Virus record (IMG/VR): IMGVR_UViG_3300024503_000015
Coordinates: 62,001-126,000 of that record
Direction: 5' to 3' (one strand)
Length of the DNA stretch: 64,000 bases
Shown here: positions 17,462-47,554 of the stretch, one piece after another
Numbering within the stretch: position 1 is the stretch's first letter
Layout of the letters: each line of letters begins with the position of its first letter
The notes under the pieces: model-generated
Database searches by the model: none
Seen by the model: only the letters and a program-made list of their open reading frames with translations
What the model was told of the DNA's origin: nothing
Made by a program: the position numbers and the translations under genes

Positions 17462-20400
17462 TTATATTGCTCCTGGGCGGTTCCATGTGTTAACAAAGTA
17501 AGAATACGCCATACCGTCACCGTCCCACCCGCCAAATTGTCCGTCAACTGTTACCTTTGTTGGCATATTAACCACTGCGCCTGTTAAGCCTTCCGGAATA
17601 GTGCTGGCAATTCTGTCTGCGCCACCTACTAAAACTGTACCAGCAATCAACTGTCCAGTAAATGTATTAGCACCACCTTGACTCAAACGTCCAGTTAAGT
17701 ATGCCTTAATTGCTCTCTGTGTTGGAATAATATTATTACTGTTAGCAATAAATGTTTCGTCTGTGCTAAACTGTCTAATAACCACACTTGATCCACCAAC
17801 TGCAATACCGCCCAGTGATAGTGTTTCTAGACCTGTTAGTCCGAATTGTGTAGCACTTAAAGTAACAATACCAGTTGCTTGTTCAACACCAAACAAATCA
17901 CCAACTTTAAAGTTACCGTCTTGGTCAGTACTAGTATAGAACACACGACCAAAGTTAACTTCAACTGCCTGATCCTGTGGAGCAAGAACTGTATCTTCTG
18001 GTAGGTTAGGATAGTTACTTTGAATAGCGTTTCCGTAGCCCACATTTAAGAAATCGTGTCCTGTTAATCTTGCCTGGCTGTATTTTGTTCTAATAATAAT
18101 ATTTGCTTCGTGTGCTGGACTTAATTCCACGGTCATATCTGGAGAAATTTCAATATTTGCTTCAATATTTGGTGCTGTTGTTCCATACACAGGGGTAGCA
18201 TTTGTTACTTTATAAATTTTACTGTTTCCTGAAATAACCAAGTTATCACCAGGAGCAGGTAGTTTAGATAAATTCTTAACTATTAATGTTAATCCGGTTT
18301 GGAATGTATCAGCATAGCCACTGCCATTAATTGTAATAATTGTAGAGTTAGTATTATAATCTTGTCCTCTGTTTACAAAAGTTGGATTTCCTAGTGTACC
18401 GTTGCTAATTCTTAATGAAGTAGTTGCAGACACAGTAACGTTTGGATCTCTAAAAGTTAATAATGGAGTACTGGTATAACCTGACCCTGGCTCCCATAAA
18501 CTAATAGATGTAATAGTTCCTGAAGTAATAACTGCACGACCTTTAGTTCTGCAACCTGTTTCAATAATACTACCAACAGTTTGAGCCGCCACTGTAACAA
18601 ATTTTCCTTGGTCGTTGTTTGTGCCTACAAACGCAAATTTAATAGCACCATATCCGTCATCCGATACTGTGCGTTCTGTCCATGCGTAGCCGTCTTCTGA
18701 TGTATATGCAACTCCAGCAGTGCTAGATAGAGCTAAAAATACACCCTGACCATATTCAATTTTGTTTACACCTGAGATAGTATATGGAGATTGTGTCCAT
18801 GTTATACCATCTCTACTGTAAGCAGGTTTAGCACTACTGCTAGAAACTGCAACAAACAAGCCATTACCATAAGCAACGTCGCTCCATGTTGTAGAGCTAG
18901 GTAATGTTGCTGATGACCAACTTGTTCCGTTTGAACTGTAAGATGCAGTAGTACTTACTGTTGAACTAGCAGTTCCTGAAACAGTAAATGATGTAATAGC
19001 GCCGCCAATAGCCGCTACGCCTGTTACAGTAATTGTAATATCGTTTGCTGTGGTTGCTCCGCCAACTGCTGTACCTAAAACACTAACTATACTAGATGTT
19101 GTATAACTAGAACCACCACTATTAACTGTTACTGTATAGCCACTGCTTCTAGCGGTTACATTAAATGTTGCCCCAGATCCACCGCCTGAAGTAGTAGACG
19201 ATGTAACACCTGTATAGGTAGTTCCATCGGATACTGCAACAAATTTTCCGTTACCAAACGTTAGTCCAGTCCAACTTCTTGCAACTAGTCCTGTACCGCT
19301 AGACCATGTACCGCCATAGTTTGAACTGTATGCAGAGCTAGTAGTTTCAGCGGCTATAGCGACAAATTTTCCGTTGCCGTACGCAACTTTACTCCAAGTA
19401 GTCAACGAAGGCAATGTAGTTGTTCTCCAACCTTCTCCGTTGTTAATAGAATATAGTGCAACTGAACCTGGATCTCCAAGGGCGCCACCGCTGGAAATTA
19501 CAACCCAGCGATTGTTACCGTAGGCAATATCTGTCCAAGTTTTTGGACTTGGCAAAGGTATTGCGTCCCAGGTTGCGCCACCGTCTGTCGATTTTCCAGC
19601 AATAGCATTACCACTTGGTAGAGCAATAAATGTGCCATCGCCATAGGCTAATCCTATCCAACTAGTGCCCGGAGCCAATGTATTAGTTGTCGATGCTGTT
19701 TGTGTCAAACTAGGAGCAGATATTGTAACTCTTGGTTCAACATAGTAAACGGTTGAATTATCTAATAACGCTTCTATAGTAGTTCCTGGATTCATATGAT
19801 CCCAACCTACTGCCGCAATGTTCATAGATCCGGTATCTGTTTTTAATGTACTTGCAGTGCCGCCAGGTGTACCGCTGACTGTAAATGTTGAAGTACTATC
19901 GATCGTCTTGACATAATATGTTGTTCCAGCAGATACATCTCCAAACAAATTAGTCGAATATGTACCGTTCATCGAACCGTAACCAATGGTTAGTGTCGAT
20001 TTTGCATTTGTAGTTGTTCCTGTCATCGATCCTGATGCTGTAGACAATGTAAATGCTGCCGCTGTTGTTTTACCCAATACTTCTCCGGTAGCAGTTGAAA
20101 GGTTTAGCGCACTACCTCCAGGAGAAGAACTAATTGTAAATGTTGTTGCATCATTAACGGCTAGAATATAATATGTTGTTTCGTTGACAATACCGCCAAA
20201 TGTATTTCCTGTAAACTTAATTGGATTGTTTGCAACAAATCCTGCTGTTGAGTCAACAGTAATTAAGTTTGTTAAAGTTTCTGTTTCTGTTACAGTTACA
20301 GAAATAACTGTATCTGTAACTGTAAATGTTGAAGAGTTAACAATCTTATTAACATAATACTTTGTTCCAGCAACAATTCCTCCAAACACAACGCCTGTAA

Positions 20401-23400
20401 ATTCTATTGGATTTAATGGCACTAGCGATGCTGTTGAAGATGTTGTAATGTAATTTGTAGCCGCAGTAGTTGCTGTGGCAGTTATACTTACTAATGTTGT
20501 CGATATTGTAAATTTGGATGCTGAAATAACATCATTAACATAATATGTTGTACCTACTGCAATGTCTCCTATTGAGGTTCCAGTAAACTGAACAGGCATG
20601 TTAATTTTCATATCATTAGTTTGACCTAATACATAACTGTTATAACCTGGGAACGACATAGTCATTGCACCTGTGTCAGAATTTAACAGCCATGCTGTTC
20701 CAAAAGGTTCAGTACTGATAGTTATTGTCGTACCATCGATAATTTCTTTAATGTAATAAGTGTAAGAGTCGGTAACGCCGCCAAAAACTGCGCCGCCAAA
20801 CTTAACTTGCATATTAACACTTAATTTTGCAGTACTAGCCAACGTTAACGTATTAGTTGATCCGCCAATTGTTTCAACAACGTTGACGAAATCAACAGAA
20901 GTATTAGTTACAGTGGTACTGTAATATGTAGGAATAAATTGTACTGGTTGATTCAAATACAATGTATCTGTGGTATAGTCTCCGTCTAAAGTAAGTATTC
21001 CTGTACTGTTATTTGTAGAAATAATGTTCAACGGTTCAAAAGATTCTTTAAGAATCTGTGCTACTTTAGTGCCCTCGTCATATGACGAAATATATCCGTA
21101 TTGTCCTGCTCCTGTTCCGCTGTTAAGGAACACTCTCATACCAATGTAGTTACTTGCAGTTTTTGTATCTGATCCTGCTAAAGTAATAGTTTCTTCGTCT
21201 CCTGCTTGAGCATTATTAGATGACACTAAGTAATTTCTTCCGCCAACTGCACTACCTGTATCTGTAATACGTGCCTGGAATACTGCGTTGGATCTAATTT
21301 CGTCTCCAATTAAGCGAGCATTAGTACCTGCACCTACTATAGAATAATTTGCATAGGCAGTATATTGATCATTCTCTGTCTCAAGGTAGAACGTAGGATC
21401 AGAATTAATCTGAACTTGTGCTCCGTAGAAGCGTGTATTTCCGCTTAGACCTGCTCGACCTCTTGGATAAATTCTAAATTGAAGATTATTATTCAATCCA
21501 ACATTGTCGTACACAGTCATCCATATTCTATACCAACCTTCAGTTAACTCTAGTTTACCGTATGAAACTGGAACTGCGCCGCCAGATGCTGTAGATACTG
21601 CAAGACCTTTAGTGCTAAATGTAAATTCTAAATAAGAATATACTGTTGATGAACCACTGTATATTGCGGCGATGTCAAATGTTGCAGATGATCCTTGTTT
21701 TGCGTAGATGCTAAATGTGTAATTTAAATCGCTGTTTGTTGGAACAACTCCTGAAACAGTGGCGGATAAAATAGAACTTCCCGATAGAGTTGCTACAGTT
21801 AAGAAGCAATCATTTGTTCCGTCTTCGCCGCCCAACGAGCTACCTGGAATTCTTAATTCGTTACCAGTAACGTAGCCGCTACCTCCAGCATTGACTACTG
21901 CTGAGTAACCTGTAGCACCCACAGTAATATCGAATGTAGCACTATTACCTGAACCAGTCACATTAACTGTTTCTACTGCTGTGTAAACTTTACCAGGAGG
22001 TAATACAGAAATATTTTGATAGATATAACTTGAATCGCTACCAGATGTTGCACCTGTCAGTGTCCATGCATCTGATTGTCCAAATGGAGATGTTGTATTC
22101 TTCTGAATAGTAACATTACCGTCTGTAGTCCATGGACTAGTTGAAAATTTATTACTGTATTGTAATAAGTTTGTTGTGTCTGCAACGTAGTTAGAGCCAG
22201 CATTACTAAATTGTATTGCTAATAATTCAGCATTAGTACCAAATGCACTTTGTACACTGGCCTGTACTTGGCTAGATCTGTTGTCAATTTTTCCTGAGAT
22301 AGGAACTTCTGTATTATCGTAACCTTCAGCAATAACACCATATGTACCATATGAGCTGTTACCGTTGGTAGCACGGATTCTACCGCCGTCTTCGGCAAAA
22401 TATCCAGCATAATTGTAGTAACCGAATACTGACACGCACTCAGTTAATGAATTAGAACCAGTACACCATACACCAATACCATCACTGATGATTTGTGTAA
22501 AGTCATTACAAGTTATTGAACGATTGCCGCCGTTGTGTAGTGTTCCATCGATTTTTAATCCGGTGCAACCGACACCAAAGTTGGTAACGTTTTGAATGTA
22601 AGGGCTTCGACGAATAATCCAAGTTCTAGTATCGTCAGGACCATTACCTGGATCTAGACTTACATAGGCACCACCCGTTGGTCTGCGTGTGCCAAAGCCG
22701 TTTGGACTTGTTAAAGATCCTGCTAGACCTGTTAATGTCATGTTACGAATGCCTGTAGCATTACGTACATAGAACATATCTTTCAAACAGTCTCCAGCAT
22801 ACACTGTCATAAATCCTGTGCCAGTTGTTAGTGCAACTACTGAACCTCCTACTGTTTCTGAAATAGTAATTTGACTGCCTACTATTTCTTTAACATAATA
22901 TGTTTGTCCTAGAGTAACTCCACCAAAATCATCATTTGTTGTTGCCGCAGAAAATTGAATAGGCATATTAACTGTGACATTTTTAATAGATCTCAGTGTA
23001 AATCTATTAGTTGAGCTACTTGAGCTAGAAGTTGATGTATAAACAGTTACTTTAGGTTGTACCACAGTTCCACGAAGTTCGTCACCGATTAGAGCAGTAT
23101 TATCTGCAACTATGATCGGTAGTTCTTCAGAATATGTTCCTGTTTTAATCATGATAGAAGTTGTCTGACCTTGATTAATTAAAGGAACATTTTCTGTGCT
23201 GGCATTTTGTATTGCATCGATTACAATGTTCATCAGGCTGGTAATTTCAAGATACGCACCAGACTCTAAAGTTAATCCATTGTTGATATACTGTTGTACT
23301 GTCGGGTCTGCTATTACTTCCCAATTTTGATTTCCAACGGTTTCTGGATTGTTATCGATATTGCCATCAATTAAACTCTTATAAAATATTTCGTTCCAAT

Positions 23401-25474
23401 AGACAATGTCGTTAGTGACATAAGTTTCTGTAGCGTCCCAAACAATATTTTCAACTTGATAGTTAACATCTGGGTTAGAGTTTTGATAGACATAACCAAT
23501 CAAAACTAATAGTCGTTCAAGTGCGGCAACAATATATGGCTGTGCCGCATCTGTTTCTGTGTTAAAGAAAGTAGTAGTGCTACCTTCAGCAAAGAATGCC
23601 TTAGTAGCAATTACTGTTCTACTATTACTAGCTCTAGTAATGTCATAAGAAAGTGCGTCAATAATTAATTCTGCATCTCGTCTAGTCGAGTATTCTTGGA
23701 ATTCCGATGTTGGGCTAAATGGAGAATTACTATTTGCTTTTTGATATAGCATCCACTGATACATTTCTTCAACTAAGAAATCTTTGTTCTCAGTTAATAA
23801 TGTATTGGCATTCTGGAAATAAAATCCGTTCTCAACTTGTTGACAAGCATACGCAATAGTTTTCCAAGGTTTATCCCATGTCTGACCGTGATCTGCATCG
23901 TCTACACCGTCGTTAGATACGTAGTACAGATCTGGAATAACAAACATTTTTTTCCAGTTTGGTTGTCCGTTAGAAATGTGGAAGTGATAATCTTCTGTAT
24001 CTCCGGCAGCACCGCCTTGTGGAATAATTGGAACAGCAACAGTTGATGTTCCGTCAAATGTAACAATGTCGCCTTGAGTATTACCTGCGTTTTCTTTTGC
24101 ATGAACTACATATACTACCCAGAATGCGTTAGCAACATCTAGGTCAGGTCTAAAGAACGAACTAGATGTATGATTTCTAATACAACGATATGTGCAGTTT
24201 TCCCAGATTACTAAGTCGCCGATAATATAATTTGTGGTGTTAGTCCAGAAATTAGTCCATCTAACTGATGGAACAACCAACTTCCATTTAAGATAATTGA
24301 CACCTACAAAGTCAATATTGTCCCCATTGGTCAATGAACCGTTAGGAACTTCGCTGATAATCAATGTTGTACTGTCATTTACAGATACCACAGTCTGGCC
24401 TTGCGTAAATGATGGGTTAACTAAAACCATGCCCTTTGTAATGCCAGCCGTTGAAACTACTTTTAAAGTTGTTCCAGAACTTCCTGTGTCCACATAAGAA
24501 CCAGTTACTGCATAACTTGTTGGATCTTGGCCTGCGCTATCTATCACGGCTGTGAATAATTGTCCGCCTCTGCGTACAACATCACCGACTCTATATTGAG
24601 CACCCGAACTCCACTCGTTCATCATTCTATAACCTTGGGTTATTAGTTCCCAAGCAGATGACGAGTCTTCAGCATTAACTGAAGGAATGATATTTAAGTT
24701 ATTGTTGATTAAACTTACGTAAGTGTAACCGCCATAGATAACAATGTCGCCTTTTTGATACAATGCTGAACTGGTCCAGCCATTTTCAAATTGTGTACCT
24801 GGTAGCCAAACATTAAATGTAGTTGTATCAAATGTAGTAGTAGAAGTATGTCCTTCTGTACAAATATAAACATCTGCTCCTAGTTTAACAAGGTCGTTTA
24901 ATTTATATCTTGTCGATGCAGTCCAAGCACCTTTGTATTCGATACCATTGTTTACTACTTCCCATTTGTAGTTGTCTGCTTCGCGGCCGTCTGTAATATT
25001 GTCAGCAGATGTATGATCTTCAACGCAACGATAAACTATACCGCCATATTTTACAATATCTCCAAAACCATAGACAGTAGAAATAGCCCAAGCAGTATTC
25101 CAGTTATCGAACTGTGCGTATGTGTCCCATTTGGTTAGGTCAATGGTTGTTAATCCACTGGTATGTGCCTCGGTACAAATATAAACAACACCACCAAATC
25201 TAATGATATTGCCGATTGAATAAAATGTGCTCGGTGTCCATTCTTCTCTCCATGCTCGACCATCAATCATTAGTTCCCAGCGAGGAGTGCTTGCGCCACC
25301 GCCTGTTACATAATATAAGTCGTCGTAGAAATTACTAGAGGATGTGTGCGGCTCTTTACATACGTAAGTTTTACCTTCGTATTGAGATACAGCGTCTCTG
25401 TTGTAGAACACGCCATCGTTCCATTGTCCTTTCCAGGTATATCTTAATCTACCAATTTTAAATTCTGCCGCCAT
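17462..25474 (-). CDS. Giant (2670 aa) tail fibre / virion structural protein, paralog of 5906-17413
   Basis: Same N-terminus (EFKIGRLRYTWKG), same C-terminus (RLTGHDFL, TSTDQDGNF, PTQRAIKAY) and several PIxFxG.xFGG.....YYV domains. Confidence 0.75.
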   Translation of the reverse strand: MAAEFKIGRLRYTWKGQWNDGVFYNRDAVSQYEGKTYVCKEPHTSSSNFYDDLYYVTGGGASTPRWELMIDGRAWREEWTPSTFYSIGNIIRFGGVVYICTEAHTSGLTTIDLTKWDTYAQFDNWNTAWAISTVYGFGDIVKYGGIVYRCVEDHTSADNITDGREADNYKWEVVNNGIEYKGAWTASTRYKLNDLVKLGADVYICTEGHTSTTTFDTTTFNVWLPGTQFENGWTSSALYQKGDIVIYGGYTYVSLINNNLNIIPSVNAEDSSSAWELITQGYRMMNEWSSGAQYRVGDVVRRGGQLFTAVIDSAGQDPTSYAVTGSYVDTGSSGTTLKVVSTAGITKGMVLVNPSFTQGQTVVSVNDSTTLIISEVPNGSLTNGDNIDFVGVNYLKWKLVVPSVRWTNFWTNTTNYIIGDLVIWENCTYRCIRNHTSSSFFRPDLDVANAFWVVYVVHAKENAGNTQGDIVTFDGTSTVAVPIIPQGGAAGDTEDYHFHISNGQPNWKKMFVIPDLYYVSNDGVDDADHGQTWDKPWKTIAYACQQVENGFYFQNANTLLTENKDFLVEEMYQWMLYQKANSNSPFSPTSEFQEYSTRRDAELIIDALSYDITRASNSRTVIATKAFFAEGSTTTFFNTETDAAQPYIVAALERLLVLIGYVYQNSNPDVNYQVENIVWDATETYVTNDIVYWNEIFYKSLIDGNIDNNPETVGNQNWEVIADPTVQQYINNGLTLESGAYLEITSLMNIVIDAIQNASTENVPLINQGQTTSIMIKTGTYSEELPIIVADNTALIGDELRGTVVQPKVTVYTSTSSSSSSTNRFTLRSIKNVTVNMPIQFSAATTNDDFGGVTLGQTYYVKEIVGSQITISETVGGSVVALTTGTGFMTVYAGDCLKDMFYVRNATGIRNMTLTGLAGSLTSPNGFGTRRPTGGAYVSLDPGNGPDDTRTWIIRRSPYIQNVTNFGVGCTGLKIDGTLHNGGNRSITCNDFTQIISDGIGVWCTGSNSLTECVSVFGYYNYAGYFAEDGGRIRATNGNSSYGTYGVIAEGYDNTEVPISGKIDNRSSQVQASVQSAFGTNAELLAIQFSNAGSNYVADTTNLLQYSNKFSTSPWTTDGNVTIQKNTTSPFGQSDAWTLTGATSGSDSSYIYQNISVLPPGKVYTAVETVNVTGSGNSATFDITVGATGYSAVVNAGGSGYVTGNELRIPGSSLGGEDGTNDCFLTVATLSGSSILSATVSGVVPTNSDLNYTFSIYAKQGSSATFDIAAIYSGSSTVYSYLEFTFSTKGLAVSTASGGAVPVSYGKLELTEGWYRIWMTVYDNVGLNNNLQFRIYPRGRAGLSGNTRFYGAQVQINSDPTFYLETENDQYTAYANYSIVGAGTNARLIGDEIRSNAVFQARITDTGSAVGGRNYLVSSNNAQAGDEETITLAGSDTKTASNYIGMRVFLNSGTGAGQYGYISSYDEGTKVAQILKESFEPLNIISTNNSTGILTLDGDYTTDTLYLNQPVQFIPTYYSTTVTNTSVDFVNVVETIGGSTNTLTLASTAKLSVNMQVKFGGAVFGGVTDSYTYYIKEIIDGTTITISTEPFGTAWLLNSDTGAMTMSFPGYNSYVLGQTNDMKINMPVQFTGTSIGDIAVGTTYYVNDVISASKFTISTTLVSITATATTAATNYITTSSTASLVPLNPIEFTGVVFGGIVAGTKYYVNKIVNSSTFTVTDTVISVTVTETETLTNLITVDSTAGFVANNPIKFTGNTFGGIVNETTYYILAVNDATTFTISSSPGGSALNLSTATGEVLGKTTAAAFTLSTASGSMTGTTTNAKSTLTIGYGSMNGTYSTNLFGDVSAGTTYYVKTIDSTSTFTVSGTPGGTASTLKTDTGSMNIAAVGWDHMNPGTTIEALLDNSTVYYVEPRVTISAPSLTQTASTTNTLAPGTSWIGLAYGDGTFIALPSGNAIAGKSTDGGATWDAIPLPSPKTWTDIAYGNNRWVVISSGGALGDPGSVALYSINNGEGWRTTTLPSLTTWSKVAYGNGKFVAIAAETTSSAYSSNYGGTWSSGTGLVARSWTGLTFGNGKFVAVSDGTTYTGVTSSTTSGGGSGATFNVTARSSGYTVTVNSGGSSYTTSSIVSVLGTAVGGATTANDITITVTGVAAIGGAITSFTVSGTASSTVSTTASYSSNGTSWSSATLPSSTTWSDVAYGNGLFVAVSSSSAKPAYSRDGITWTQSPYTISGVNKIEYGQGVFLALSSTAGVAYTSEDGYAWTERTVSDDGYGAIKFAFVGTNNDQGKFVTVAAQTVGSIIETGCRTKGRAVITSGTITSISLWEPGSGYTSTPLLTFRDPNVTVSATTSLRISNGTLGNPTFVNRGQDYNTNSTIITINGSGYADTFQTGLTLIVKNLSKLPAPGDNLVISGNSKIYKVTNATPVYGTTAPNIEANIEISPDMTVELSPAHEANIIIRTKYSQARLTGHDFLNVGYGNAIQSNYPNLPEDTVLAPQDQAVEVNFGRVFYTSTDQDGNFKVGDLFGVEQATGIVTLSATQFGLTGLETLSLGGIAVGGSSVVIRQFSTDETFIANSNNIIPTQRAIKAYLTGRLSQGGANTFTGQLIAGTVLVGGADRIASTIPEGLTGAVVNMPTKVTVDGQFGGWDGDGMAYSYFVNTWNRPGAI

Positions 25475-29200: not shown

Positions 29201-30436
29201 TGGTGTGATAAATGTCACTGCGTGGAATAACATGGCCGCTTCAATGCTGTTTGCATTGACAATGCTACCGTCTAAGAATGCACCGTGACCTGCATCACCT
29301 GCGGCATATCCGCGAGGGTCATCTGCTGTGGCTGTACCCAGTCTTACACTACTACCAAAGGTTAAAACTGTAATATTTTTTACATAAGGACTGCGTGTAC
29401 TAACAGTCATACCTGGAGCAAATGTAAATGCGTGTCCAGTGTTGCCAATTGGCTCGTGCTCAAAACCTGTAATTGTAAAGTCTTGAATGGTAGTTTCGCC
29501 ATTCATCTTGAAACAGTCTTGTTGACGTGTTGCCGCTGTAGGACGAATTGTTACAGAACGCAGGTTAGCACCAACAATCGCAACGCCCTGTGGTACTGTT
29601 AGTGGAAAAATTTCTTCGTAATCGCCAGGGTACACATAAACAGTATCGCCTGTAGTTGCTTGGCTAAGAGCATGTTTGATTGTTAAGAACGGATCGTTTT
29701 GGTGTGTGCCGCTGTAACTGTCACTGCCGTTTACAGCAACGTACCAAATGTTCCCCTGACGTAGGTTTAAGTTAATGTTATCTACAACTAAATCACCAGT
29801 ATCGATTACATCAGCAAATAAGTTGTTAGTCCATACGTCTGCCCAACGTTTGCCACTTTCACCTAATGTGTAAGTATCGTCTTGATCTGGAACAATGTTG
29901 CTGGCTACATCTGCGGCAAAAGTAATATTATCTGTATTGGCATCACCTAATGTAATATTGCCGTCTGCTGTGATATTTCCAGTAGCATGAATATTTCCGT
30001 AAACATTAGTGTCGGCAAATACTTCTACTGTGCCTGTGCCATTTGGACGTAGTTCAAGATTGGTGTTTGTGCTGTTTGTGCTGATAACATTGTTTTCTAT
30101 GTCAATGTCGTCAACACGTAATTTTGCTTGATATACTACTGGACTTGCACCGCTAGGTAGCAAGGATAATACATCTTGTGTTGTGGAAATTGTTGTAGCA
30201 GAAATGCTAATGTCTGCAATTTCTGCTAGAGTATCTACTAGTAAGTTAGTAGTTCTAGTTGTACCATTTACGTGTAAAGTATGTGTAGGGTCGTTAGTCT
30301 TTATACCAACTCTGTGGTTGGCGGAGTCTGGATCAGTAACTTTTAAGTAAACAAGGTCAGTCTCAAAGGCTAAATCCACACCCTGGCGTAGAAGGTTGGC
30401 CTTTAAGAGCGGACCGGAAATTCGACCAACGGCCAT
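26222..30436 (-). CDS. Tail fibre/spike-like protein with beta-helix and LamG/ConA-like domain (1404 aa)
   Basis: WYVA.NG.D....PF.TI..AL....GDTV.V.PG.Y.E beta-helix start; FGTASLYLDGTGDY...WTHIAFTR...YVDDVRVSKG LamG-like block; SNSNLEL.ANGTG repeats; AGGAG RBS. Confidence 0.7.
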   Translation of the reverse strand: MAVGRISGPLLKANLLRQGVDLAFETDLVYLKVTDPDSANHRVGIKTNDPTHTLHVNGTTRTTNLLVDTLAEIADISISATTISTTQDVLSLLPSGASPVVYQAKLRVDDIDIENNVISTNSTNTNLELRPNGTGTVEVFADTNVYGNIHATGNITADGNITLGDANTDNITFAADVASNIVPDQDDTYTLGESGKRWADVWTNNLFADVIDTGDLVVDNINLNLRQGNIWYVAVNGSDSYSGTHQNDPFLTIKHALSQATTGDTVYVYPGDYEEIFPLTVPQGVAIVGANLRSVTIRPTAATRQQDCFKMNGETTIQDFTITGFEHEPIGNTGHAFTFAPGMTVSTRSPYVKNITVLTFGSSVRLGTATADDPRGYAAGDAGHGAFLDGSIVNANSIEAAMLFHAVTFITPAAETLIATNGARIEWLNSFTYFADKGMYLYSSSEGFAGQGRTEVRVTGNSGTFAVGNTLSYYDTDGVTVLGSGTIDEVGTDGKIYLTGKVTGLETQSERGGKTITANGDAQLKTAQKKFGTASLYLDGTGDYVTVNSLTDFVFDADFALEGWFYPTNVTGTFSLFTIGGEAADRYTTMIENGTLKGNFYGSSTVTFGGTISINTWTHIAFTRSGSTIRAFVNGTLLGTTDTVAGDVGNNGSFRIGSDGSGSANFVGYVDDVRVSKGTARHTSSFTAPSSALPNDSYSVLLAHFDGADTSTVFVDDVLLPQDIRTNAGGTATAFSLVDYSDFGAEVRSIGSAAVYGNYGIYGDGLGVVAYLIGQNLAYIGVLHRTDNDVTYVVQANEVVELNGAKIYYSSVDHKGDFRVGDLFYVNQASGTVEFTTTSFNISSLTGVTFTDGVNTTYIDGTEVSTGNIKISGNTIESTTGVVNVLSANDEINLQNNVNITGNLDVTGNVTVGGNITLGDQPTDTISIVAGITSNITPGVTETYTLGTNGLQWANLYTGNLHVDSINIDGNVIKTVDSNADLELRANGTGRIYVPSDNVLINNDLTVLGTSTLGNTNITGTVTYTGNIIQTGNVTQTGNYSVSGTLTVGSDAQFQNIKIAGNTIKTTLSNSNLELSAAGTGIITMPYNNVSLGQNLTVSGNVSSTNALASNRVTAEEFYTGDIIVKDNYIATTVSNSNLELRANGTGYIVLEEFNVNANVISSNSASDIVIQPGTNKLVSINSNQSLIIPVGNTAERPTAQSGMIRFNSQMGRYEGYDGVNWIKLSGVGDLDDTTRITAELTPGANDDTIRFYNNNVVTADLTSARLQVPRVEVDNIIIDGNTISSTTNTDIIFNATGTGSIKLANFAIKDNTITNTVSGAITTITQSGTGYFKIAGTNGFVVPTGISSERPAYAVVGMTRYNSELKQLEIFNGTTWDSAAGAGGGINAATAEDIAITYALILG

Positions 30437-30555
30437 ATATCACTCCTGATAACCCCGTGTTTCACGGTTAACCAAGTTCTCATCCCTTGCGGGCTCTTTG
30501 CTGGTTTACCACAGTTTAATCATACAAGAAATTGGTCGTTCCTTGTAATCAGTAG
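30437..30555 (-). ncRNA. Candidate structured 5' leader RNA with a pseudoknot
   Basis: Hairpins TACAAGGAA/TTTCTTGTA, CCC-GCAA-GGG and CCGTG-AAA-CACGG; loop GACCAA complementary to downstream TTGGTT; lies between late promoter and RBS. Confidence 0.5.
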
Positions 30556-30562
30556 TATTTAG
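30556..30562 (-). promoter_or_regulatory. Late promoter (CTAAATA)
   Basis: TAAATA core at the start of the intergenic region. Confidence 0.65.
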
Positions 30563-30574
30563 CCGTTTGTATTT

Positions 30575-33500
30575 TTAACCTAGTATTAGGTTCCAAAGAT
30601 AGGAAATGTCTTCCATATATTGTTGCGTAACAGTTTCGCCCTCACCGCCAGCATTACCCCATTTTGTACCAGTCCACACTTCAACAACACTTTCTTCAAT
30701 GTTGTATCTAGTTTCACCGACTTCTGGGGATGAAGGTTGTTCTGCTGTAGTTCCGTAGGGAATTACTAGACCATTAGTTCCAGTAAATTTAATATATCCT
30801 AGCCCTGTAGATCCAAGTGTTATTGCAGAATTTAACTCGTTTCTAATATCAGATCCATCTGGGGTAATATTTTCAATTCTATTAAGTCCGGTTCCATTGG
30901 GTGCAAATGTTAGATCATTGTTAGTTGTAGTAACTGTGTTAACATCAAATAATGTATTGTCTACTAGTAATCCGTTAGTACGTAATCTTGTGGAAGTAAT
31001 ATCCATTGTTAGGATATTATCTGCTTTAAAGTTTATTTCTTCACTAGAACCAGCAGTTACAGATGTTTGTCTATCTGCTGAATATACTCCGCCAAATGCC
31101 GCGCCATAGCCTTCAAAAATTCCAGTTGTGGTATTAAATCTAACATCACCTTGTTGGAATGTTGGGCGATTTGCCGTGGTACCTTTTGGAACTATTAATG
31201 CCGCAGTAGTATCAAATTTTAAATTTTTACCAGTGTTGGGCTGTAGTACAATGTCATCTGCATTAGAAACAGTACTTCCAGTAAATTTTGTAGTTTCTAA
31301 AAATACTCCGCCTGCAGAGTTTCCTCTTAATTCTAAATTTGAGTTACTGGTAGTTGTAGAAATGTAGTTGTCTTTGATTAAGATATCTGCATTATAAAAT
31401 TCTTCAGCAGTATATCTATTGCTGGCTGTGATATTTGTTGTGTAATAATCACCAGAAATGCTAAGACTTCGTGTAATGCTAACATTATCTACTGGAATTT
31501 GTATAATGCCGGAAGCGTGTGCGCTTAGTTCTAAATCACTGTTTGAATCACTGGTGAAAATTCTATTATTAACTATCTGAACATTGTCAAAATATGCGCT
31601 AGATCCTACAGTTAATGTTCCGCTAATGTCTAAAAATCCTGTGTTAGATTTATCACCAGCGAGTACTACTGCACCGGTATGATTTAAAGTTCCTATAACA
31701 TTTACAGATTTTACAGTAGTTAATCCGCTGACAGTAAGATTTTGGTCGAACGCCGCATAATCTTTTAAGTTTACGATTCCTGCAGAATTAGCACGTAGTT
31801 CTAAGTCACTGTTTGACACAGTAGTTTCTATTACATTTCCTCTAATTCTAATATCGTTAATATTTGCTTCTGATGTATAAGTATCTCGCCATACTTTTGT
31901 ACTTGAACCTAAGTTGTAGGTTTCTGTTACATCTGGTTCAAAATTTTGATTTAATGTTTGTTTGAATGTTACGGTATCTACTGTTTGATTACCTAAAATT
32001 AATTGTCCACCTAGACTAAAATCTCCGGTGATATCTAAATTCTTAGCAACATTAACATCTAAAGTTAGGTTAGTTTCTCCGCTGGCTGATAAAATGTTTA
32101 CTTCGCCAAATAAAGATTCAATTGTATTTCCTGCTATTTTTAAATTGCCTGTATTAACAAAATCTTTTGTAATTGTTGTTACGTCTGCGCCCGTGGTAAT
32201 AGTCAAACCAGTTGCACCTGTTGATGCTAATCCGCTGGCGTCAAAACTAACTGTACCATTTTCAAAATCGACATAAAATTGATCGCCTACACGGAATGTA
32301 CCTTTGTGATCCTGACTTTGATAGTAAACTCTACCGCTGTTTAATTCTACTGTTTCGTTAGTTTGTACAACTAGTGTGTCATCATTAGTAGCATCTTTGC
32401 CTGTACCTATATAGGCAAAGTTGTGCTGAATTAGATACATTAATGTATCTGCACCGTCTGCTACTGCTCCATAATTTCCGTAAACGTTTGCTGAACCAAT
32501 ACTACGAACTTCTGCACCATAGGCCAGTGTGCTACCATCTTCAGTTAATCTACCTGTGCCTTGTATAGCATATAGAGCTCTATTAGCAAAATATGTAAAT
32601 GAATTTAACCATTCAACACGCACACCGTTGGTCATTGTCAATGCATCTACACCAGGTGTGATAAATGTCACAGCATGGAACAACATACTTGCTTCTTTAG
32701 TTAAGTAGTTTGTTTCACTACCGTCTACTAGGGCACCTTTACCCGCATCGCCACTGGCAAAACCTCTTGGATCATCGGCTGTAGTTGTTGTACCTTGTGT
32801 TATAACTGATACATTTTGAATGTAAGGACTGCGACTAGTTACCTGCGCATTTGGAGCAAAACGGAAAGCATAACCTTTGTCGTTAATACTGTCATAGTAA
32901 AAGTCTTTGATTGTTAAGTTATTAACTGTGGTTTCACCATTTAAATGAAATACGTCTTCGCTTTGACTGGCTGTGTCTGGAACAATGGTAACGCTTCTTA
33001 ATTCTAATCCACTTACAGCAACACCTGCCGGAACAACTAATGGTAATAGTTCTGCATAAGTTCCTGGATATATTTTAATTGTGTCACCGGCAGTGGCCAC
33101 GCTTAATGCTTTTTCAATAGTAGCATACGGTGCGTTTTCGTGATTACCTTGATTTAAGTTATCGCCATTTTCAGCAACAAACCATGTTTTGCCCGGACGA
33201 AGAGCATAGTTAACTCCACTAGGAGTTGATAAACTGCTAGTAGTTACTTGTTGCCCGTTGACTAGATTTGTGTACAGGCCGTTCCATCTATTAGATGATG
33301 ATGTTCCTAAACTATAAAATGCATCTGTATCTGGAACAATGTTACTGGCTATGTCTGCATTAAAATCTACAGCATCGTTTTGATCTGAACCAAATGTAAT
33401 CGTGCCGTCTAAGGTAATATCGCCGGTAGAGTGTAAATTACCAGTAATATTAAACTCGTTGTAAACTTCTAACGTGCCTGATCCGTTTGGTCTAATTTCT

Positions 33501-36158: not shown

Positions 36159-36581
36159 TTAAACTGCAATCAATACTAATACGTCTGCTGACGAATCGTT
36201 ATCTAAATACCACTTGTACTTGTTACCGCTAAAGTCATAAGCAAGGCGCTTAGTTAATTTAGCAATAGCAGTAGTACCAGGAGTTTGACCAGTTGTAGAA
36301 CCTAAAATACGAATTTCACCATTGGCTGCTGGTGTTCCAGAAACTAGTTTACCAACTTTTAAGTTAGTACCTGTAATAGAACTGATGCTTTCTGCTTCAG
36401 TAAATGCATCATCGGATGTTTTTAAAACAACGTATGTGCTCTTGCCACGTTGTTTAACAATTTGATAGTCACTGGCTAATGAACCGCCGAAGTAACCTTG
36501 AACTAAAATACCTGCTTGTGATGTAGTAAATGAACGAGTAACTTTAGTACCGTATACATCTTTCTTTAATGGACGTCCCAT
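36159..36581 (-). CDS. Hypothetical late protein (MGRPL N-terminus), possibly capsid-associated
   Basis: Own late promoter, strong AAGGAG RBS, directly downstream of the major capsid gene. Confidence 0.6.
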   Translation of the reverse strand: MGRPLKKDVYGTKVTRSFTTSQAGILVQGYFGGSLASDYQIVKQRGKSTYVVLKTSDDAFTEAESISSITGTNLKVGKLVSGTPAANGEIRILGSTTGQTPGTTAIAKLTKRLAYDFSGNKYKWYLDNDSSADVLVLIAV

Positions 36582-36665
36582 TTGTTTTCTCCTTATGTTG
36601 ACGTTTTAGGTCTACGCAGAGGGATTCTGCATAAGTTCGCTAATGCGAATATAATTTAGACATTG

Positions 36666-36672
36666 TATTTAG
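36666..36672 (-). promoter_or_regulatory. Late promoter (CTAAATA)
   Basis: TAAATA core just past the gp23 terminator. Confidence 0.65.
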
Positions 36673-36676
36673 CCAC

Positions 36677-36708
36677 AAAAGAAAAAGGACTCCGAAGAGT
36701 CCTTTTCT
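36677..36708 (-). terminator. Rho-independent terminator of the major capsid gene
   Basis: AAAAGGACTC-TTCG-GAGTCCTTTT stem with C(UUCG)G loop followed by TCTTTT. Confidence 0.9.
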
Positions 36709-36730
36709 TGTTACACTTGTTAAGTGTTGA

Positions 36731-37906
36731 TTACTGGAATGTAGCGTTAGAGATACTAACTGTACCTAAGTAATCAGCCGCGTTACCAAGAGATGATGCT
36801 GTGTTGTTCAACTCAACATATCCATAACGAGTCATGAAAGACACGACTGGTTCGAATGATGTTGGGTCTAATACAACGCCAGAGCTCATCAATGGAACGT
36901 ATGGGCAGTAGAAAGCGGCTGCGTCAGATTCGCTAGAACCTTTGTAACCAACTAATACTGATGCGCTGTCAGATGCGTATGTGTTAACATAGATCTTCAT
37001 AGCATTGTTCAATGTACCAACAAACTTAGTGTTTGTAGGTGCTTCGAAAGTACCTTCTGTTGTTCTTGCGAACGCAGAAGTTGTTGCACTTTGAAGGATT
37101 GTTAATGCGTATGGGCTAACAACGGCCCAGTTACCAGCACCACGACGTGTACGTTGTGCGATAACGTTAGCGGCACGGTTGATTAGAACTGCCAAAGCGG
37201 CGTGTTCGTCACCAACGAATGTTGCTGTACCAGATACTGTTGCCTGGTCAAATGCTTGGTTGTTACCGTTAGATGTTGCAAGAGTTGCTAGGGAACCTAG
37301 AACTTCTTGGTCGATTTCAGCAGTGATTTCTTGAGCAAGAGCAGCCATGATTTCTGCTTCGATGTCAATACCTTGTTGGGCTTGTGCATCTTGAGCAGCC
37401 TCGAATGTCCAACGTGCAGACAATTTACGAGTCTTGGCTTCAACTGTTTGCTTCAAGATTTGGATGCTCATACGCTTACCAGCAACACCTTCTAATGCGG
37501 CAGTTGCGGCGGCTGTAGTAGCAGATCCGTTATTTGCAGAATAACCTTCTGCAATCTTGAATGGGCTTAGAGCCTCTTCACCAGCGGTAGCACCATATGT
37601 ACCACTTAGTGTATCGCTGTAGCGAACACGTAGAGTATGGATTTGACCAACTGGACCAGTCATTGGTTGTACACCAACTAATTCGTTGGCAATAACTGTT
37701 GGCATAACACGACGGATCACTGGAAGGATCACGCGGTTAAGGGTTGCGACGTTACCGGCAGAAGTAGCACCAGTTGACGCAGATTCTGAAAGATACTTAC
37801 GAGTATTCTCTAAAGTAACTCCCATTACGCTACGCTTGGTACCTTGAAGGCCTTCTAATAGTGCCTCTTTAGTTTCTTGCCAGCGGCTTTCTAGTAGTTC
37901 TGACAT
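36731..37906 (-). CDS. gp23: Major capsid protein (T4 gp23 family)
   Basis: GVQPMTGP.GQI, VEAKTRKL.A.WT.EAAQD, EI..EID.E, FY.PYVPL and F.P...F.TRYG motifs. Confidence 0.95.
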   Translation of the reverse strand: MSELLESRWQETKEALLEGLQGTKRSVMGVTLENTRKYLSESASTGATSAGNVATLNRVILPVIRRVMPTVIANELVGVQPMTGPVGQIHTLRVRYSDTLSGTYGATAGEEALSPFKIAEGYSANNGSATTAAATAALEGVAGKRMSIQILKQTVEAKTRKLSARWTFEAAQDAQAQQGIDIEAEIMAALAQEITAEIDQEVLGSLATLATSNGNNQAFDQATVSGTATFVGDEHAALAVLINRAANVIAQRTRRGAGNWAVVSPYALTILQSATTSAFARTTEGTFEAPTNTKFVGTLNNAMKIYVNTYASDSASVLVGYKGSSESDAAAFYCPYVPLMSSGVVLDPTSFEPVVSFMTRYGYVELNNTASSLGNAADYLGTVSISNATFQ

Positions 37907-46745: not shown

Positions 46746-47095
46746 TAGCATTATCCAGATTGTTCAGTCACACTTCGCCCGCACAGGGCAAAGTTAAAAA
46801 CATTATCCGAGTTGCACAATGTCACACAGCGTTAGAGCATTACAGTGGCGGTTGTCCGGTACCACGAGCTCCGTCTTATCACAACGGCGGTAAACAAATA
46901 TACGCTATCATACTTGCTTACGTGAGGTTTTTCTCCTCTCCTTGAGCCTTTTCTTCTTAAAACAGCAAAACCGCGGCAATTTGCGATCCTCGTCCTGTTA
47001 AGGATAGTTGCTGAGTACTCTTAACGGCAAGAGAATTCCGTCCCTGCGACCCGAGGTCCAGGTATAGAGCGCACGAATTTAGCCTGCGCTAGCCA
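46746..47095 (-). ncRNA. Candidate large structured non-coding RNA downstream of GIY-YIG nuclease
   Basis: At least nine hairpins; about 47% GC by hand count over 46741-47100, clearly above the flanking genes; several stems need G-U pairs that work only on the minus strand. Confidence 0.6.
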
Positions 47096-47539
47096 TTAAC
47101 CGTTTGATTTTGCCTGTGCTTGTTCTAATAAACGCTGTCTTAGTATATTTGATCCGCCTACTCTAACATTAATAATACCGTTATAGTAGTCGTCAGTTTC
47201 TAAAACCCTACGTTCGAACTGCTCTCTTGCCTCTAGATAAGACATTTCTGCCTTGGATTTGCAAAAATAAAGTATTTCTCTTGTGAATTTTTCTGGACCT
47301 AGTGCGTGGACGTCTGCTTGTAATCTCTCAGATGAGCCCCAATATTCGCGCCAATCGCTTTCTACTGTGCTACGTCTTTTGAGTTTTTTGCCTTTGAGTG
47401 GTGGTTTTGTACGCTTAAACTGTGCTAGTTTTTTGCCTATATATTTCTGTCCAGATTGGTTGTTAGTGATGAGATAAACAAAGCCTATAACGCCTTCGGG
47501 TATTTCTTCAACTAATACATTTTGATAGTGCCACGACAT
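47096..47539 (-). CDS. GIY-YIG family endonuclease (standalone, short)
   Basis: GFVYLITN...KYIGKK, Y.GSS, F.REIL..C, E...Q and YYN motifs; likely start ATG 47539 (MSWHY). Confidence 0.8.
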   Translation of the reverse strand: MSWHYQNVLVEEIPEGVIGFVYLITNNQSGQKYIGKKLAQFKRTKPPLKGKKLKRRSTVESDWREYWGSSERLQADVHALGPEKFTREILYFCKSKAEMSYLEAREQFERRVLETDDYYNGIINVRVGGSNILRQRLLEQAQAKSNG

Positions 47540-47554
47540 GCACATATATACCAG

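What the first reader, a model, noticed from the sequence alone, without database searches (positions are those of the whole stretch)
30437..30562. ~115-nt pseudoknotted leader RNA in front of the LamG-containing fibre gene
Seen: most late promoters here sit 5-55 nt from the ATG, but this one is ~120 nt away. The leader has a 9-bp hairpin whose loop GACCAA can pair with downstream UUGGUU, a UGG-UAAA-CCA hairpin, a CCC-GCAA-GGG GNRA hairpin, and UAACC-GUG-AAA-CAC-GG-GGUUA ending 2 nt before the AGGAG RBS. Inference: a compact cis-regulatory RNA (translational operator, riboswitch-like or processing element) that tunes one of two paralogous receptor-binding proteins. GGUAAACC and CGGGGUUA echo c-di-GMP-I riboswitch words, but the overall fold does not obviously match.
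Basis: partly seen in the sequence, partly recalled or inferred. Interest (0 to 1): 0.6.

Follow-up and report, generated by a model that had tools for sequence, protein, structure and literature searches.

The report
Conserved pseudoknot leader in jumbo phages
The long leader in front of this phage baseplate/fibre gene is a real, strongly conserved folded RNA, found once per genome in about 170 uncultured freshwater jumbo-phage contigs, that reaches into the first 11 codons and most likely controls how the gene is translated, although what it senses is unknown.

Summary
Comparative data show they belong to a real RNA family. I found 171 IMG/VR loci and 10 metagenome loci with 103 distinct core sequences. 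Each of six 209-278 kb contigs holds one strong copy, always in front of one orthologous gene whose product begins MA(V/I)GRISGPLLK.

The supported helices are:
- a 5'-terminal hairpin P1;
- an H-type pseudoknot, with stem S1 (UGU/GCA) interleaved with stem S2 (AACC-X / Y-N-GGUU), whose X:Y pair is standard in 106 of 109 sequences across five pair types;
- optional insert hairpins;
- hairpin P4 (CCGUG-AAA-CACGG).

The P1 loop GACCAA pairs with codons 3-5 of the gene (UUGGUC), not with the internal UUGGUU. In at least two lineages the pair changed together to GUCCA:UGGAC. Codons 10-11 (CUCUU) are predicted to pair with the Shine-Dalgarno (ribosome-binding) sequence. Twenty-two leaderless paralogs encode the same peptide without these nucleotide constraints.

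No Rfam family matches, including c-di-GMP-I. No cultured phage or prokaryotic genome holds the motif.

The best reading is a translational operator whose effector is unknown. It is a new orphan RNA motif, though it may already be listed in an automated catalogue that I could not check.

The parts
30555..30563 (-). Late-promoter-like box GCTAAATAC (T4-late-like TAAATA core). By analogy with T4, the transcription start would be at about 30549, 1-2 nt before P1.
   Evidence: TAAATA is invariant in 77 of 77 aligned leaders. TAAATAC occurs 8 times in the window against 19.8 expected, and four of these are intergenic upstream of minus-strand genes. RNA-library contigs of three runs stop at 30528-30532, which is weak evidence. 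The start site itself is inferred.
30523..30547 (-). P1: 5'-terminal hairpin with a 9-bp stem (30547-30539 pairs with 30531-30523) and loop L1 CGACCAA (30538-30532).
   Evidence: There are 104 different P1 segments among 109 leaders. 107 of them fold with at least 6 pairs, and the mean z-score is -3.1. The loop holds GACC in 78 of 108.
30514..30522 (-). Joining region J (UGAUUAAAC). U30519 may form a long-range pair or base triple with A30468.
   Evidence: Alignment columns 7 and 83 pair as U:A 76, A:U 8, C:G 2 and other 17. A30468 also co-varies with G30454 as A..G, U..U and G..U. This is tentative.
30499..30513 (-). Pseudoknot 5' half. S1 5' strand is UGU (30513-30511). Invariant GGUA follows (30510-30507). 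S2 5' strand is AACC-X (30506-30502; X is A here). S1 3' strand is GCA (30501-30499).
   Evidence: GUGGUAAACC is invariant in all leaders retrieved with an anchor placed elsewhere. S1 pairs vary as U:A to A:U (3 sequences in 2 lineages) and U:G to U:A (7 sequences).
30476..30498 (-). Variable insert in pseudoknot loop 3. In this window it is AAG, the hairpin CCC-GCAA-GGG (30493-30484), then AUGAGAAC.
   Evidence: 61 of 109 members have only a 10-nt linker here (the short form). The others have one or two hairpins with different, co-varying stems and GNRA or UNCG loops. The insert is therefore dispensable and peripheral.
30468..30475 (-). Pseudoknot S2 3' strand: Y (U30475), bulged N (U30474) and GGUU (30473-30470), followed by AA (30469-30468).
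   Evidence: The X:Y pair is C:G 71, A:U 26, G:U 5, G:C 2, U:A 2 and non-standard 3, of 109. It is the top covarying pair (MIp 0.90). Further G:C cases occur in a short-form lineage.
30452..30467 (-). P4 hairpin CCGUG-AAA-CACGG (30467-30455), followed by GGU (30454-30452).
   Evidence: C:G changes to G:C at the second pair in 5 sequences and U:A to U:G in 5. In L146 the whole hairpin is replaced by a different hairpin.
30434..30447 (-). Shine-Dalgarno AGGAG (30447-30443), a 6-nt spacer, and the start codon AUG (30436-30434).
   Evidence: Only 3-8 nt separate the conserved core from the Shine-Dalgarno sequence in all members.
30423..30429 (-). ORF nucleotides +8 to +14, UUGGUCG (codons V3-G4-R5). 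They are the exact complement of loop L1, CGACCAA.
   Evidence: The Gly4 codon is GGT in 103 of 109, against even usage at other Gly codons. Loop GUCCA(A) goes with ORF (U)UGGAC in at least two lineages. In leaderless paralogs the Gly codon is mixed and Arg is mostly AGA.
30404..30412 (-). ORF codons P9-L10-L11 (CCG CUC UUA). CGCUCUU is the predicted anti-Shine-Dalgarno partner.
   Evidence: CTC makes up 90 of 102 Leu10 codons (entropy 0.76 bits, against 2.0-2.5 for other Leu codons). CUCUU(A/G) is present in 97 of 118 leader-bearing genes and 0 of 22 leaderless paralogs. The Shine-Dalgarno sequence is paired with probability 0.68, against 0.54 after synonymous recoding, and its partner is ORF +29 to +33. 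The pairing is inferred; no clear covariation was found.

Best explanation
This is a roughly 145-nt cis-acting mRNA element running from the predicted start of a late transcript through codon 11 (window 30549-30404, minus strand). It most likely governs translation initiation of the second of two tandem baseplate-wedge/tail-fibre paralogs.

Shown by comparison: a 5'-terminal hairpin P1; an H-type pseudoknot (S1 UGU/GCA interleaved with S2 AACC-X/Y-N-GGUU) with an almost invariant sequence; optional hairpins in pseudoknot loop 3; hairpin P4 only 3-8 nt before the Shine-Dalgarno sequence; a loop-to-ORF pairing between the P1 loop (GACCAA) and codons 3-5 (UUGGUC); and nucleotide-level constraint on codons 9-11.

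Inferred: the Shine-Dalgarno sequence pairs with CUCUU of codons 10-11. The loop of that hairpin, which holds the AUG and UUGGUCG, is clamped by the P1 loop. The ribosome-binding region therefore sits in a closed complex. The invariant pseudoknot next to it would be the docking site of a trans-acting effector that sets how often the region opens. I think the effector is more likely a phage protein, possibly unassembled product of this gene, than a metabolite. The element is tied to one structural gene and occurs once per genome, like the autogenous operators of T4 genes 32 and 43.

My confidence by level: that the structured RNA is real, about 0.95; that it acts in cis on translation, about 0.7; that the effector is a protein, about 0.4.
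For: - Conservation and covariation.
- Single strong copy per genome (77-83 bits, E about 1e-20) in six contigs of 209-278 kb; the next-best hits have E of 0.009 or worse.
- Always upstream of the same orthologue, even when the upstream neighbour differs (an upstream gene ending ..LILG* or one ending ..HGFD*).
- P1 loop to ORF compensatory change GACCA:UGGUC to GUCCA:UGGAC, at a synonymous Gly position, in at least two lineages.
- Suppressed synonymous variation at codons 3-5 and 8-11.
- Internal control of 22 leaderless paralogs that encode the same [VIL]GRISG..L peptide but use mixed Gly codons, mostly AGA for Arg, and no CUCUU. The window's own upstream paralog is one of them.
- The Shine-Dalgarno sequence is predicted paired more often than after synonymous recoding (0.68 against 0.54; 75 of 109 sequences; partner +29 to +33).
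- The stretch is present in six riverine metatranscriptome runs. In three of them contigs begin at 30528-30532, and the upstream 430 nt are uncovered.
Against: - No effector is identified and no RNA-binding domain was found in the product (Pfam finds only Laminin_G_3).
- The pairing of the Shine-Dalgarno sequence with codons 10-11 has no clear compensatory change. The recoding test is not corrected for relatedness of the sequences.
- P1 and its loop are absent or unrelated in some members. L175 has no P1, and the subfamily whose P1 reads GAUGCC..GGCAG has no GACC loop. The clamp is therefore accessory.
- About 40 invariant nucleotides, a possible base triple and variable peripheral hairpins look at least as much like a riboswitch aptamer as like a protein site.
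- The RNA evidence comes from assembled contigs, which cannot prove a transcript end or exclude DNA carry-over.
- The sample was gathered with fixed sequence anchors, so members that differ in both anchors at once were missed.
Confidence: 0.4

Rival explanations
1. It is a riboswitch. The pseudoknot plus P4 form an aptamer for a small molecule of the infected cell, such as a nucleotide second messenger or alarmone. Ligand binding shifts the balance between the closed ribosome-binding region and an open one. This would let the phage set the dose of one baseplate/fibre paralog according to host state.
For: - About 40 nearly invariant nucleotides, many of them unpaired (entropy 0.014 bits per position in the core).
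- H-type pseudoknot with zero nucleotides between the two stems and an A-rich loop 3.
- A possible base triple between the joining region (U30519), A30468 and G30454.
- Dispensable peripheral hairpins with GNRA or UNCG loops.
- The core ends 3-8 nt before the Shine-Dalgarno sequence.
- The same genome carries two other orphan Rfam motifs.
Against: - It is associated with a single structural gene family and occurs once per genome, whereas riboswitch classes usually control several ligand-related genes.
- It is absent from one genome each of 185,579 prokaryotic species.
- No Rfam aptamer matches, including c-di-GMP-I.
- No ligand is suggested by the gene context.
Confidence: 0.2
2. It is an effector-free RNA device. 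The structure alone fixes a low or temperature-dependent translation rate and protects the 5' end of the late mRNA (a 5'-terminal hairpin acting against RNase E or RppH). This would keep the second paralog at a set ratio to the first.
For: - P1 sits at the predicted 5' end.
- The Shine-Dalgarno sequence and early codons are predicted to be paired.
- The leaderless upstream paralog has a plain ~19-nt leader.
Against: Simple occlusion or stabiliser hairpins do not need an invariant 40-nt pseudoknot with conserved unpaired bases. Thermometers and stabilisers drift in sequence, as P1 does here (104 variants).
Confidence: 0.17
3. It is a processing element. The conserved core would be a self-cleaving ribozyme or a specific RNase site that separates the transcript of the second paralog from read-through RNA.
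For: RNA-library contigs of three runs end at nearly the same place (30532, 30528, 30532), inside the P1 loop or its 3' arm. Small pseudoknotted ribozymes are common in phage metagenomes (my own knowledge).
Against: - No match to any Rfam ribozyme family at E up to 10.
- The contig ends lie in the variable P1, not in the invariant core. They are also what a transcript starting about 17 nt upstream would give at 3-10x depth.
- Contigs cannot show RNA ends.
- One run has a contig straight through the leader.
Confidence: 0.07
4. It is a DNA-level element. The conserved block would be a recombination or regulatory cassette that mediates exchange of fibre modules between phages, like the promoter-stem-loop cassettes of T4-type phages, rather than a functional RNA.
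For: - The block sits at the junction of two mosaic paralogs.
- It includes a promoter.
- It is far better conserved than both flanking genes.
Against: - There are compensatory changes in four helices and in a pairing about 110 nt apart.
- G:U pairs are tolerated on the transcribed strand only.
- The hairpins vary in sequence while keeping their pairing.
Confidence: 0.03

Closest known systems
T4 gene 32 mRNA 5' pseudoknot operator, and the gene 43 hairpin operator (autogenous translational repression; reviewed in PMC3014915)
   Same: It is a structured element in the leader of a T4-type phage mRNA. It is tied to one gene, occurs once per genome and contains a pseudoknot. The presumed action is at translation initiation.
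   Different: The sequence is unrelated. Here the pseudoknot abuts the Shine-Dalgarno sequence instead of nucleating binding along a long unstructured AU-rich tract. The product is a large structural protein with no known nucleic-acid-binding domain. No binding protein is known.
Riboswitch aptamers with an H-type pseudoknot next to the Shine-Dalgarno sequence (preQ1-I/II, SAM-II/V, fluoride)
   Same: It has a compact pseudoknot with coaxial stems and an A-rich loop 3. Unpaired bases are invariant. It lies directly before the ribosome-binding site.
   Different: No Rfam model matches. The gene context is one structural gene. No bacterial copies were found. No ligand is known.
c-di-GMP-I riboswitch (GEMM-I, RF01051)
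   Same: It shares short words: GGNAAACC, GCAAAG and CGGGGUUA. Some long-form members carry a GAAA-capped hairpin.
   Different: There is no hit at E up to 10 in the window, in a long-form member or in a short-form member. More than half of the members have no insert hairpins at all, so the two-hairpin tetraloop-receptor architecture is absent. The A after GGGGUU is not conserved.
Orphan metagenomic RNA motifs of Rfam found in this same window: freshwater-2 (RF02980) and Polynucleobacter-1 (RF01718; Weinberg 2010, PMC2864571)
   Same: They are conserved structured RNAs of unknown function from fresh water or estuaries. Freshwater-2 here also lies between a GCTAAATAC box and the Shine-Dalgarno sequence of a late gene.
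   Different: Their sequences and folds are different. The present motif is not in Rfam 15.
Automated catalogue of 8,495 candidate structured RNAs from IMG/VR intergenic regions (Fremin, Bhatt, Kyrpides 2023, PMC10690425)
   Same: It uses the same data source and the same kind of object. It reports candidates upstream of gp20 and gp32 genes.
   Different: Its supplementary alignments are not held here, so I cannot tell whether this motif is listed. The text does not mention tail or baseplate genes. An intergenic-only screen would not have seen the pseudoknot or the pairing with the ORF.
RBS-occluding hairpins of T4 late genes (e, soc, 49, I-TevI), and long-range 5'UTR-ORF pairings such as the MS2 long-distance interaction and hok fold-back inhibition
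   Same: The initiation region is paired with a distant segment of the same mRNA.
   Different: In T4 the late promoter lies inside the hairpin, so late transcripts escape occlusion. Here the whole structure lies downstream of the late promoter and is combined with an invariant pseudoknot.

Membership tests
c-di-GMP-I riboswitch (RF01051) | Match to the Rfam covariance model (sequence plus structure) | tested here: not met
   No hit at the gathering threshold on the whole window. No hit at E up to 10 on window 30300-30750, on the long-form L009 or on the short-form L020.
c-di-GMP-I riboswitch (RF01051) | Two parallel hairpins joined by a tetraloop-receptor contact around the ligand site | tested here: not met
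   61 of 109 members have a 10-nt linker and no hairpin at that place. The rest have one or two hairpins of varied sequence.
c-di-GMP-I riboswitch (RF01051) | Binds c-di-GMP | not testable with these tools
   Needs in-line probing or calorimetry.
Known riboswitch classes with an H-type pseudoknot (preQ1, SAM-II/V, fluoride and others in Rfam 15) | Match to a family model | tested here: not met
   only chance-level hits to unrelated families.
Riboswitch (as a general kind) | Conserved aptamer with covariation, next to an expression platform | tested here: met
   Pseudoknot plus P4 with 97.9% standard pairs and covariation above all 500 shuffles. The core lies 3-8 nt from the Shine-Dalgarno sequence.
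Riboswitch (as a general kind) | Controls genes functionally linked to a ligand, usually several gene families, and present in cellular genomes | tested here: not met
   There is one downstream gene family only and one copy per genome. The pattern is absent from 185,579 species genomes except for 3 chance coding hits.
Autogenous phage translational operator (T4 gene 32 type) | Structured element in the leader of the regulated gene, single copy, gene-specific | tested here: met
Autogenous phage translational operator (T4 gene 32 type) | The gene product binds nucleic acid | tested here: inconclusive
   Pfam finds only Laminin_G_3. PHROGs name it a baseplate wedge or tail fibre protein. The first ~130 residues have no match in cultured phages.
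Self-cleaving ribozymes in Rfam (hammerhead, twister, pistol, hatchet, HDV-like) | Match to a family model | tested here: not met
T4-type late promoter | TATAAATA-like box about 6-7 nt upstream of the transcript start, with no -35 element | tested here: inconclusive
   TAAATA is invariant in 77 of 77 leaders. No sigma-70-like site is present. The word is depleted in the window and found before genes. The transcript start is not mapped; contig ends at 30528-30532 are only compatible with it.
Candidate structured RNAs of Fremin et al. 2023 (DNAVirus_N) | Listed in that catalogue | not testable with these tools
   No supplementary files are held.

The most novel reading that the evidence does not exclude
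The invariant pseudoknot is the aptamer of a new riboswitch class that exists only in lytic jumbo phages. It would read a small molecule of the infected cell, for instance a nucleotide second messenger or alarmone, to decide how much of an alternative baseplate/receptor-binding paralog is built into progeny virions. Host physiology would then be coupled to virion composition.
Probability: 0.17. Interest if true: 0.9.

Novelty: new member of a known kind. Interest (0 to 1): 0.6.

Why it matters
Structured leaders that control structural genes of phages are almost unknown, and jumbo phages of fresh waters are uncultured. This motif has three useful properties:
- It is widespread, with about 170 contigs.
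- It is supported by covariation, including a pairing that constrains synonymous codon positions.
- It is attached to only one of two tandem baseplate/fibre paralogs.

It therefore offers a defined 145-nt object with which to ask how such phages set the dose of alternative tail proteins. It can be tested in vitro without the unknown host, by probing, toeprinting and reporter fusions. If it binds a ligand, it would be a phage-only riboswitch class. If it binds its own product, it would be an assembly-feedback operator for a virion protein.

It also shows that intergenic-only motif screens miss the parts of such elements that lie inside ORFs.

Tried and rejected
- Rfam 15, at gathering threshold on the whole window and at E up to 10 on three representatives: only chance hits (BMV3_UPD-PK1, CRISPR-DR18, GIR1, mir-5881, two lncRNA pieces).
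- blastn of the leader against 50,697 cultured-phage records at E up to 10: one chance hit. tblastn of the first 200 residues matched only residues 131-200 in pelagiphage- and cyanophage-type fibres.
- Pattern scan of one genome each of 185,579 prokaryotic species: three chance coding hits.
Rejected because Y of that word covaries with X, and because the loop change A to U would break that pairing yet restores pairing with the ORF.
Rejected because the 3' side is not conserved, and the flanking positions co-vary as A..G, U..U and G..U, which are not standard pairs.
- The small hairpin UGG-UAAA-CCA. RNAalifold prefers a nested UGUGG/CC-GCA hairpin. Its GG and CC are invariant, so it cannot be separated from S2 by covariation. 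I favour S2 because X:Y extends it, but the two could be alternative states.
- Mini-ORF AUG-AUU-AAA-CUG-UGG-UAA (MIKLW). Its AUG is present only in some P1 types, so it is incidental. No other ORF of 20 aa or more is conserved in the leader.
- Terminator or sigma-70 promoter in 30200-30800: none.
- Covariation between the bases after GGAG and codon 9: no consistent pattern.
- Upper stem AUGGC/GGUC. Not conserved, because the Ser7 third position varies freely.
- The metagenome scan used too loose a pattern. Only 10 of 120 stretches were real members.
- Supplement of the 2023 catalogue: not held.
- A longer pairing of the P1 5' arm with codons 6-7, predicted for the window, is specific to this subfamily.

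Full report
WHAT IS AT THE SITE

The window is part of a 270-kb IMG/VR virus record. Its major capsid protein is about 66-70% identical to those of the jumbo phages Phosso, Vibrio 2.275.O and PA5oct. The genes around the finding lie on the minus strand. The 138-nt spacer 30574-30437 separates a 1144-aa ORF from a 1404-aa ORF. The 1404-aa ORF carries a Laminin_G_3 domain, and PHROGs calls it a baseplate wedge subunit or tail fibre.

- GCTAAATAC at 30563-30555;
- a 9-bp hairpin at 30547-30523 with loop CGACCAA;
- UGG-UAAA-CCA;
- CCC-GCAA-GGG;
- the GUG-AAA-CAC hairpin;
- AGGAG at 30447-30443.

On its own the sequence folds only modestly better than shuffles (z = -2.79).

IT IS A WIDESPREAD, CONSERVED RNA FAMILY

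- Relatives whose protein is 70-89% identical keep the leader almost unchanged.
A second anchor in the 5' part gave about 35 more stretches with variant 3' parts.
- Altogether 171 viral loci and 10 metagenome loci carry the motif, with 103 distinct core sequences.
- All share one layout: stop codon of the upstream gene, a TAAATA box, hairpin P1, a conserved core, 3-8 nt, the Shine-Dalgarno sequence, then an ORF that begins MA(V/I)GRISGPLLK.
- A covariance model built on the core finds one strong hit (77-83 bits) in each of six contigs of 209-278 kb, and nothing else with E better than 0.009.
- No Rfam 15 family matches. No cultured phage holds the leader. No prokaryotic species genome holds it.
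- The phage occurs in 18 riverine DNA runs and 6 riverine metatranscriptome runs.

THE FOLD THAT THE COMPARISON SUPPORTS

- P1: 104 different sequences among 109 leaders, and 107 still fold into a hairpin of at least 6 pairs.
- Core: GUGGUAAACC and GGUU never vary, even when the retrieval anchor lay elsewhere.
- X:Y pair: the base after AAACC (X) pairs with the base two positions before GGUU (Y). The counts are C:G 71, A:U 26, G:U 5, G:C 2, U:A 2 and non-standard 3, of 109. This is the strongest covarying pair, and a short-form lineage shows G:C as well. It extends a helix S2, AACC-X with Y-N-GGUU.
- S1: the U of ACUGUGG pairs with the A of GCAA. U:A changes to A:U in two lineages, and the neighbouring U:G becomes U:A in seven sequences. 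This gives a 3-bp stem UGU/GCA.
- Pseudoknot: S1 and S2 interleave, which makes an H-type pseudoknot with no nucleotide between the stems.
- Loop 3 of the pseudoknot: a 10-nt linker in 61 of 109 members. In the rest it holds one or two hairpins with co-varying stems and GNRA or UNCG loops. The window's CCC-GCAA-GGG is one of these.
- P4 is CCGUG-AAA-CACGG. Its second pair flips from C:G to G:C, U:A becomes U:G, and one member has a different hairpin there.
- Whole core: on the MAFFT alignment the structure has 97.9% standard pairs and a covariation score of 0.129, against 0.036 for shuffles (0 of 500) and at most 0.038 when slid.
- Possible base triple: the positions flanking P4 co-vary as A..G, U..U and G..U, and one of them also tracks a U in the joining region (U:A 76, A:U 8, C:G 2). 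This is tentative.

THE ELEMENT REACHES INTO THE ORF

- The P1 loop CGACCAA (30538-30532) is the exact complement of UUGGUCG at +8 to +14 (30429-30423).
- The Gly4 codon is GGT in 103 of 109 members, while other Gly codons of the same genes use all four codons evenly. Pro9 is CCG in 82 of 91 and Leu10 is CTC in 90 of 102.
- Where Gly4 is GGA followed by CG, the loop reads GUCCA(A). This holds in one long-form lineage with several P1 variants and in a short-form lineage. The only exception is L018, whose P1 has no such loop.
- As an internal control, 22 paralogs that encode the same [VIL]GRISG..L peptide but have short, plain leaders use GGT 13, GGA 3, GGG 3 and GGC 3. They mostly use AGA for Arg, and none has CUCUU. 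Of 118 leader-bearing genes, 97 have CUCUU(A/G).
- The window's own upstream gene is such a paralog. It is 44-46% identical, its true start is the ATG at 33994, and a box lies 19 nt upstream.
- Folding predicts that the Shine-Dalgarno sequence pairs with +29 to +33. The pairing probability is 0.68, against 0.54 after synonymous recoding. I found no compensatory change for this pairing.

EXPRESSION

The TAAATA box is invariant. TAAATAC is depleted in the window, with 8 occurrences against 19.8 expected, and it lies before several genes.

In three metatranscriptome assemblies the contigs that cover the start of the gene end at 30532, 30528 and 30532, and nothing covers 30533-30964. A fourth run has a contig straight through the leader, and also a contig of a related phage's leader. 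These are contigs at 3-12x depth. They fit a transcript starting at the box, or a cut in the P1 loop, but they prove neither. DNA carry-over cannot be excluded.

INTERPRETATION

That this is a structured RNA is, in my view, settled. Its place against the Shine-Dalgarno sequence, the pairing of the P1 loop with codons 3-5 and the constraint on codons 9-11 all point to control of translation initiation.

I propose a closed complex. The Shine-Dalgarno sequence pairs with codons 10-11, and the loop of that hairpin is clamped by P1. The invariant pseudoknot serves as the docking site for an effector.

A protein effector is somewhat more likely than a metabolite, because the element belongs to one structural gene and occurs once per genome. 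The aptamer-like conservation keeps a riboswitch clearly alive as an alternative. A constitutive tuning or stabilising device, a processing element and a DNA-level cassette are less likely, for the reasons given under the rival explanations.

LIMITS

- Members were collected with fixed sequence anchors.
- The sequences are related, so shuffle-based numbers overstate independence. I therefore rely on changes seen in separate lineages.
- S2 and the small nested hairpin share invariant bases and cannot be told apart. They may be alternative states.
- An automated 2023 catalogue built from the same database may already list the intergenic part of this motif.

Noticed in passing
window 36579-36650 (-), with its flanks 36560-36740: The Rfam motif freshwater-2 (55.2 bits) also lies in a late leader. 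The MCP gene is followed by a strong terminator-like hairpin with a T run, then GCTAAATAC (36673-36665), the freshwater-2 RNA, AAGGAG and the ATG of a 140-aa ORF (36159-36581). Two late genes of this phage therefore carry conserved structured leaders.
   Followed up: partly
window 46960-47094 (-): A full-length Polynucleobacter-1 RNA (119.3 bits, E 2.6e-25) lies directly downstream of ORF 47096-47545. Weinberg 2010 lists this motif as 'Burkholderiales, fresh water/estuary'. Its presence in a riverine jumbo phage suggests that some of those metagenomic hits are viral, and it hints at a Burkholderiales host.
   Followed up: no
window 33994 (true ATG) versus 34009 (listed TTG start): The mechanical ORF list starts the 1144-aa paralog at a TTG. 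The likely start is the ATG at 33994 (MPVDIGRISGGMLK), preceded by GGAG and by an AATAAATA box 19 nt upstream.
   Followed up: yes
window 5906-17413 (-) and 17462-25474 (-): Two giant ORFs of 3835 and 2670 aa lie downstream of the fibre/baseplate paralogs in the same orientation. The first has a GATAAATAC box 20 nt before its ATG.
   Followed up: no
whole window: The word TAAATAC is depleted: 8 occurrences against 19.8 expected from shuffles, and every one of 100 shuffles had at least 8. This is as expected if the word is avoided outside promoters.
   Followed up: partly
L175 (minus strand of the locus) and L146: These are two atypical members. L175 has no P1 hairpin at all and a GTG start. 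L146 keeps the pseudoknot but has a different hairpin (UUGGGU-GUGA-UACCCAA) in place of P4.
   Followed up: partly
Read-laying run X19, record 3 (window 30492-30563): A 579-nt contig from a riverine RNA library matches only the conserved leader (3 differences) and continues on both sides into unlike sequence, including a long-form insert. A second phage with this leader is therefore present in the same sample.
   Followed up: no
window 30506-30523 (-): A tiny reading frame AUG-AUU-AAA-CUG-UGG-UAA overlaps the joining region and the invariant GGUAAACC. Its AUG is kept only in some P1 types, so it looks incidental.
   Followed up: yes
loci L094, L019, L042, L043, L123 and others: The usual gene order in these phages is a gene ending ..HGFD(Q)*, then a leaderless GRISG paralog (LGRISGPLLADNL type), then the leader-bearing paralog. 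In a few contigs the leader-bearing gene follows the HGFD gene directly.
   Followed up: partly
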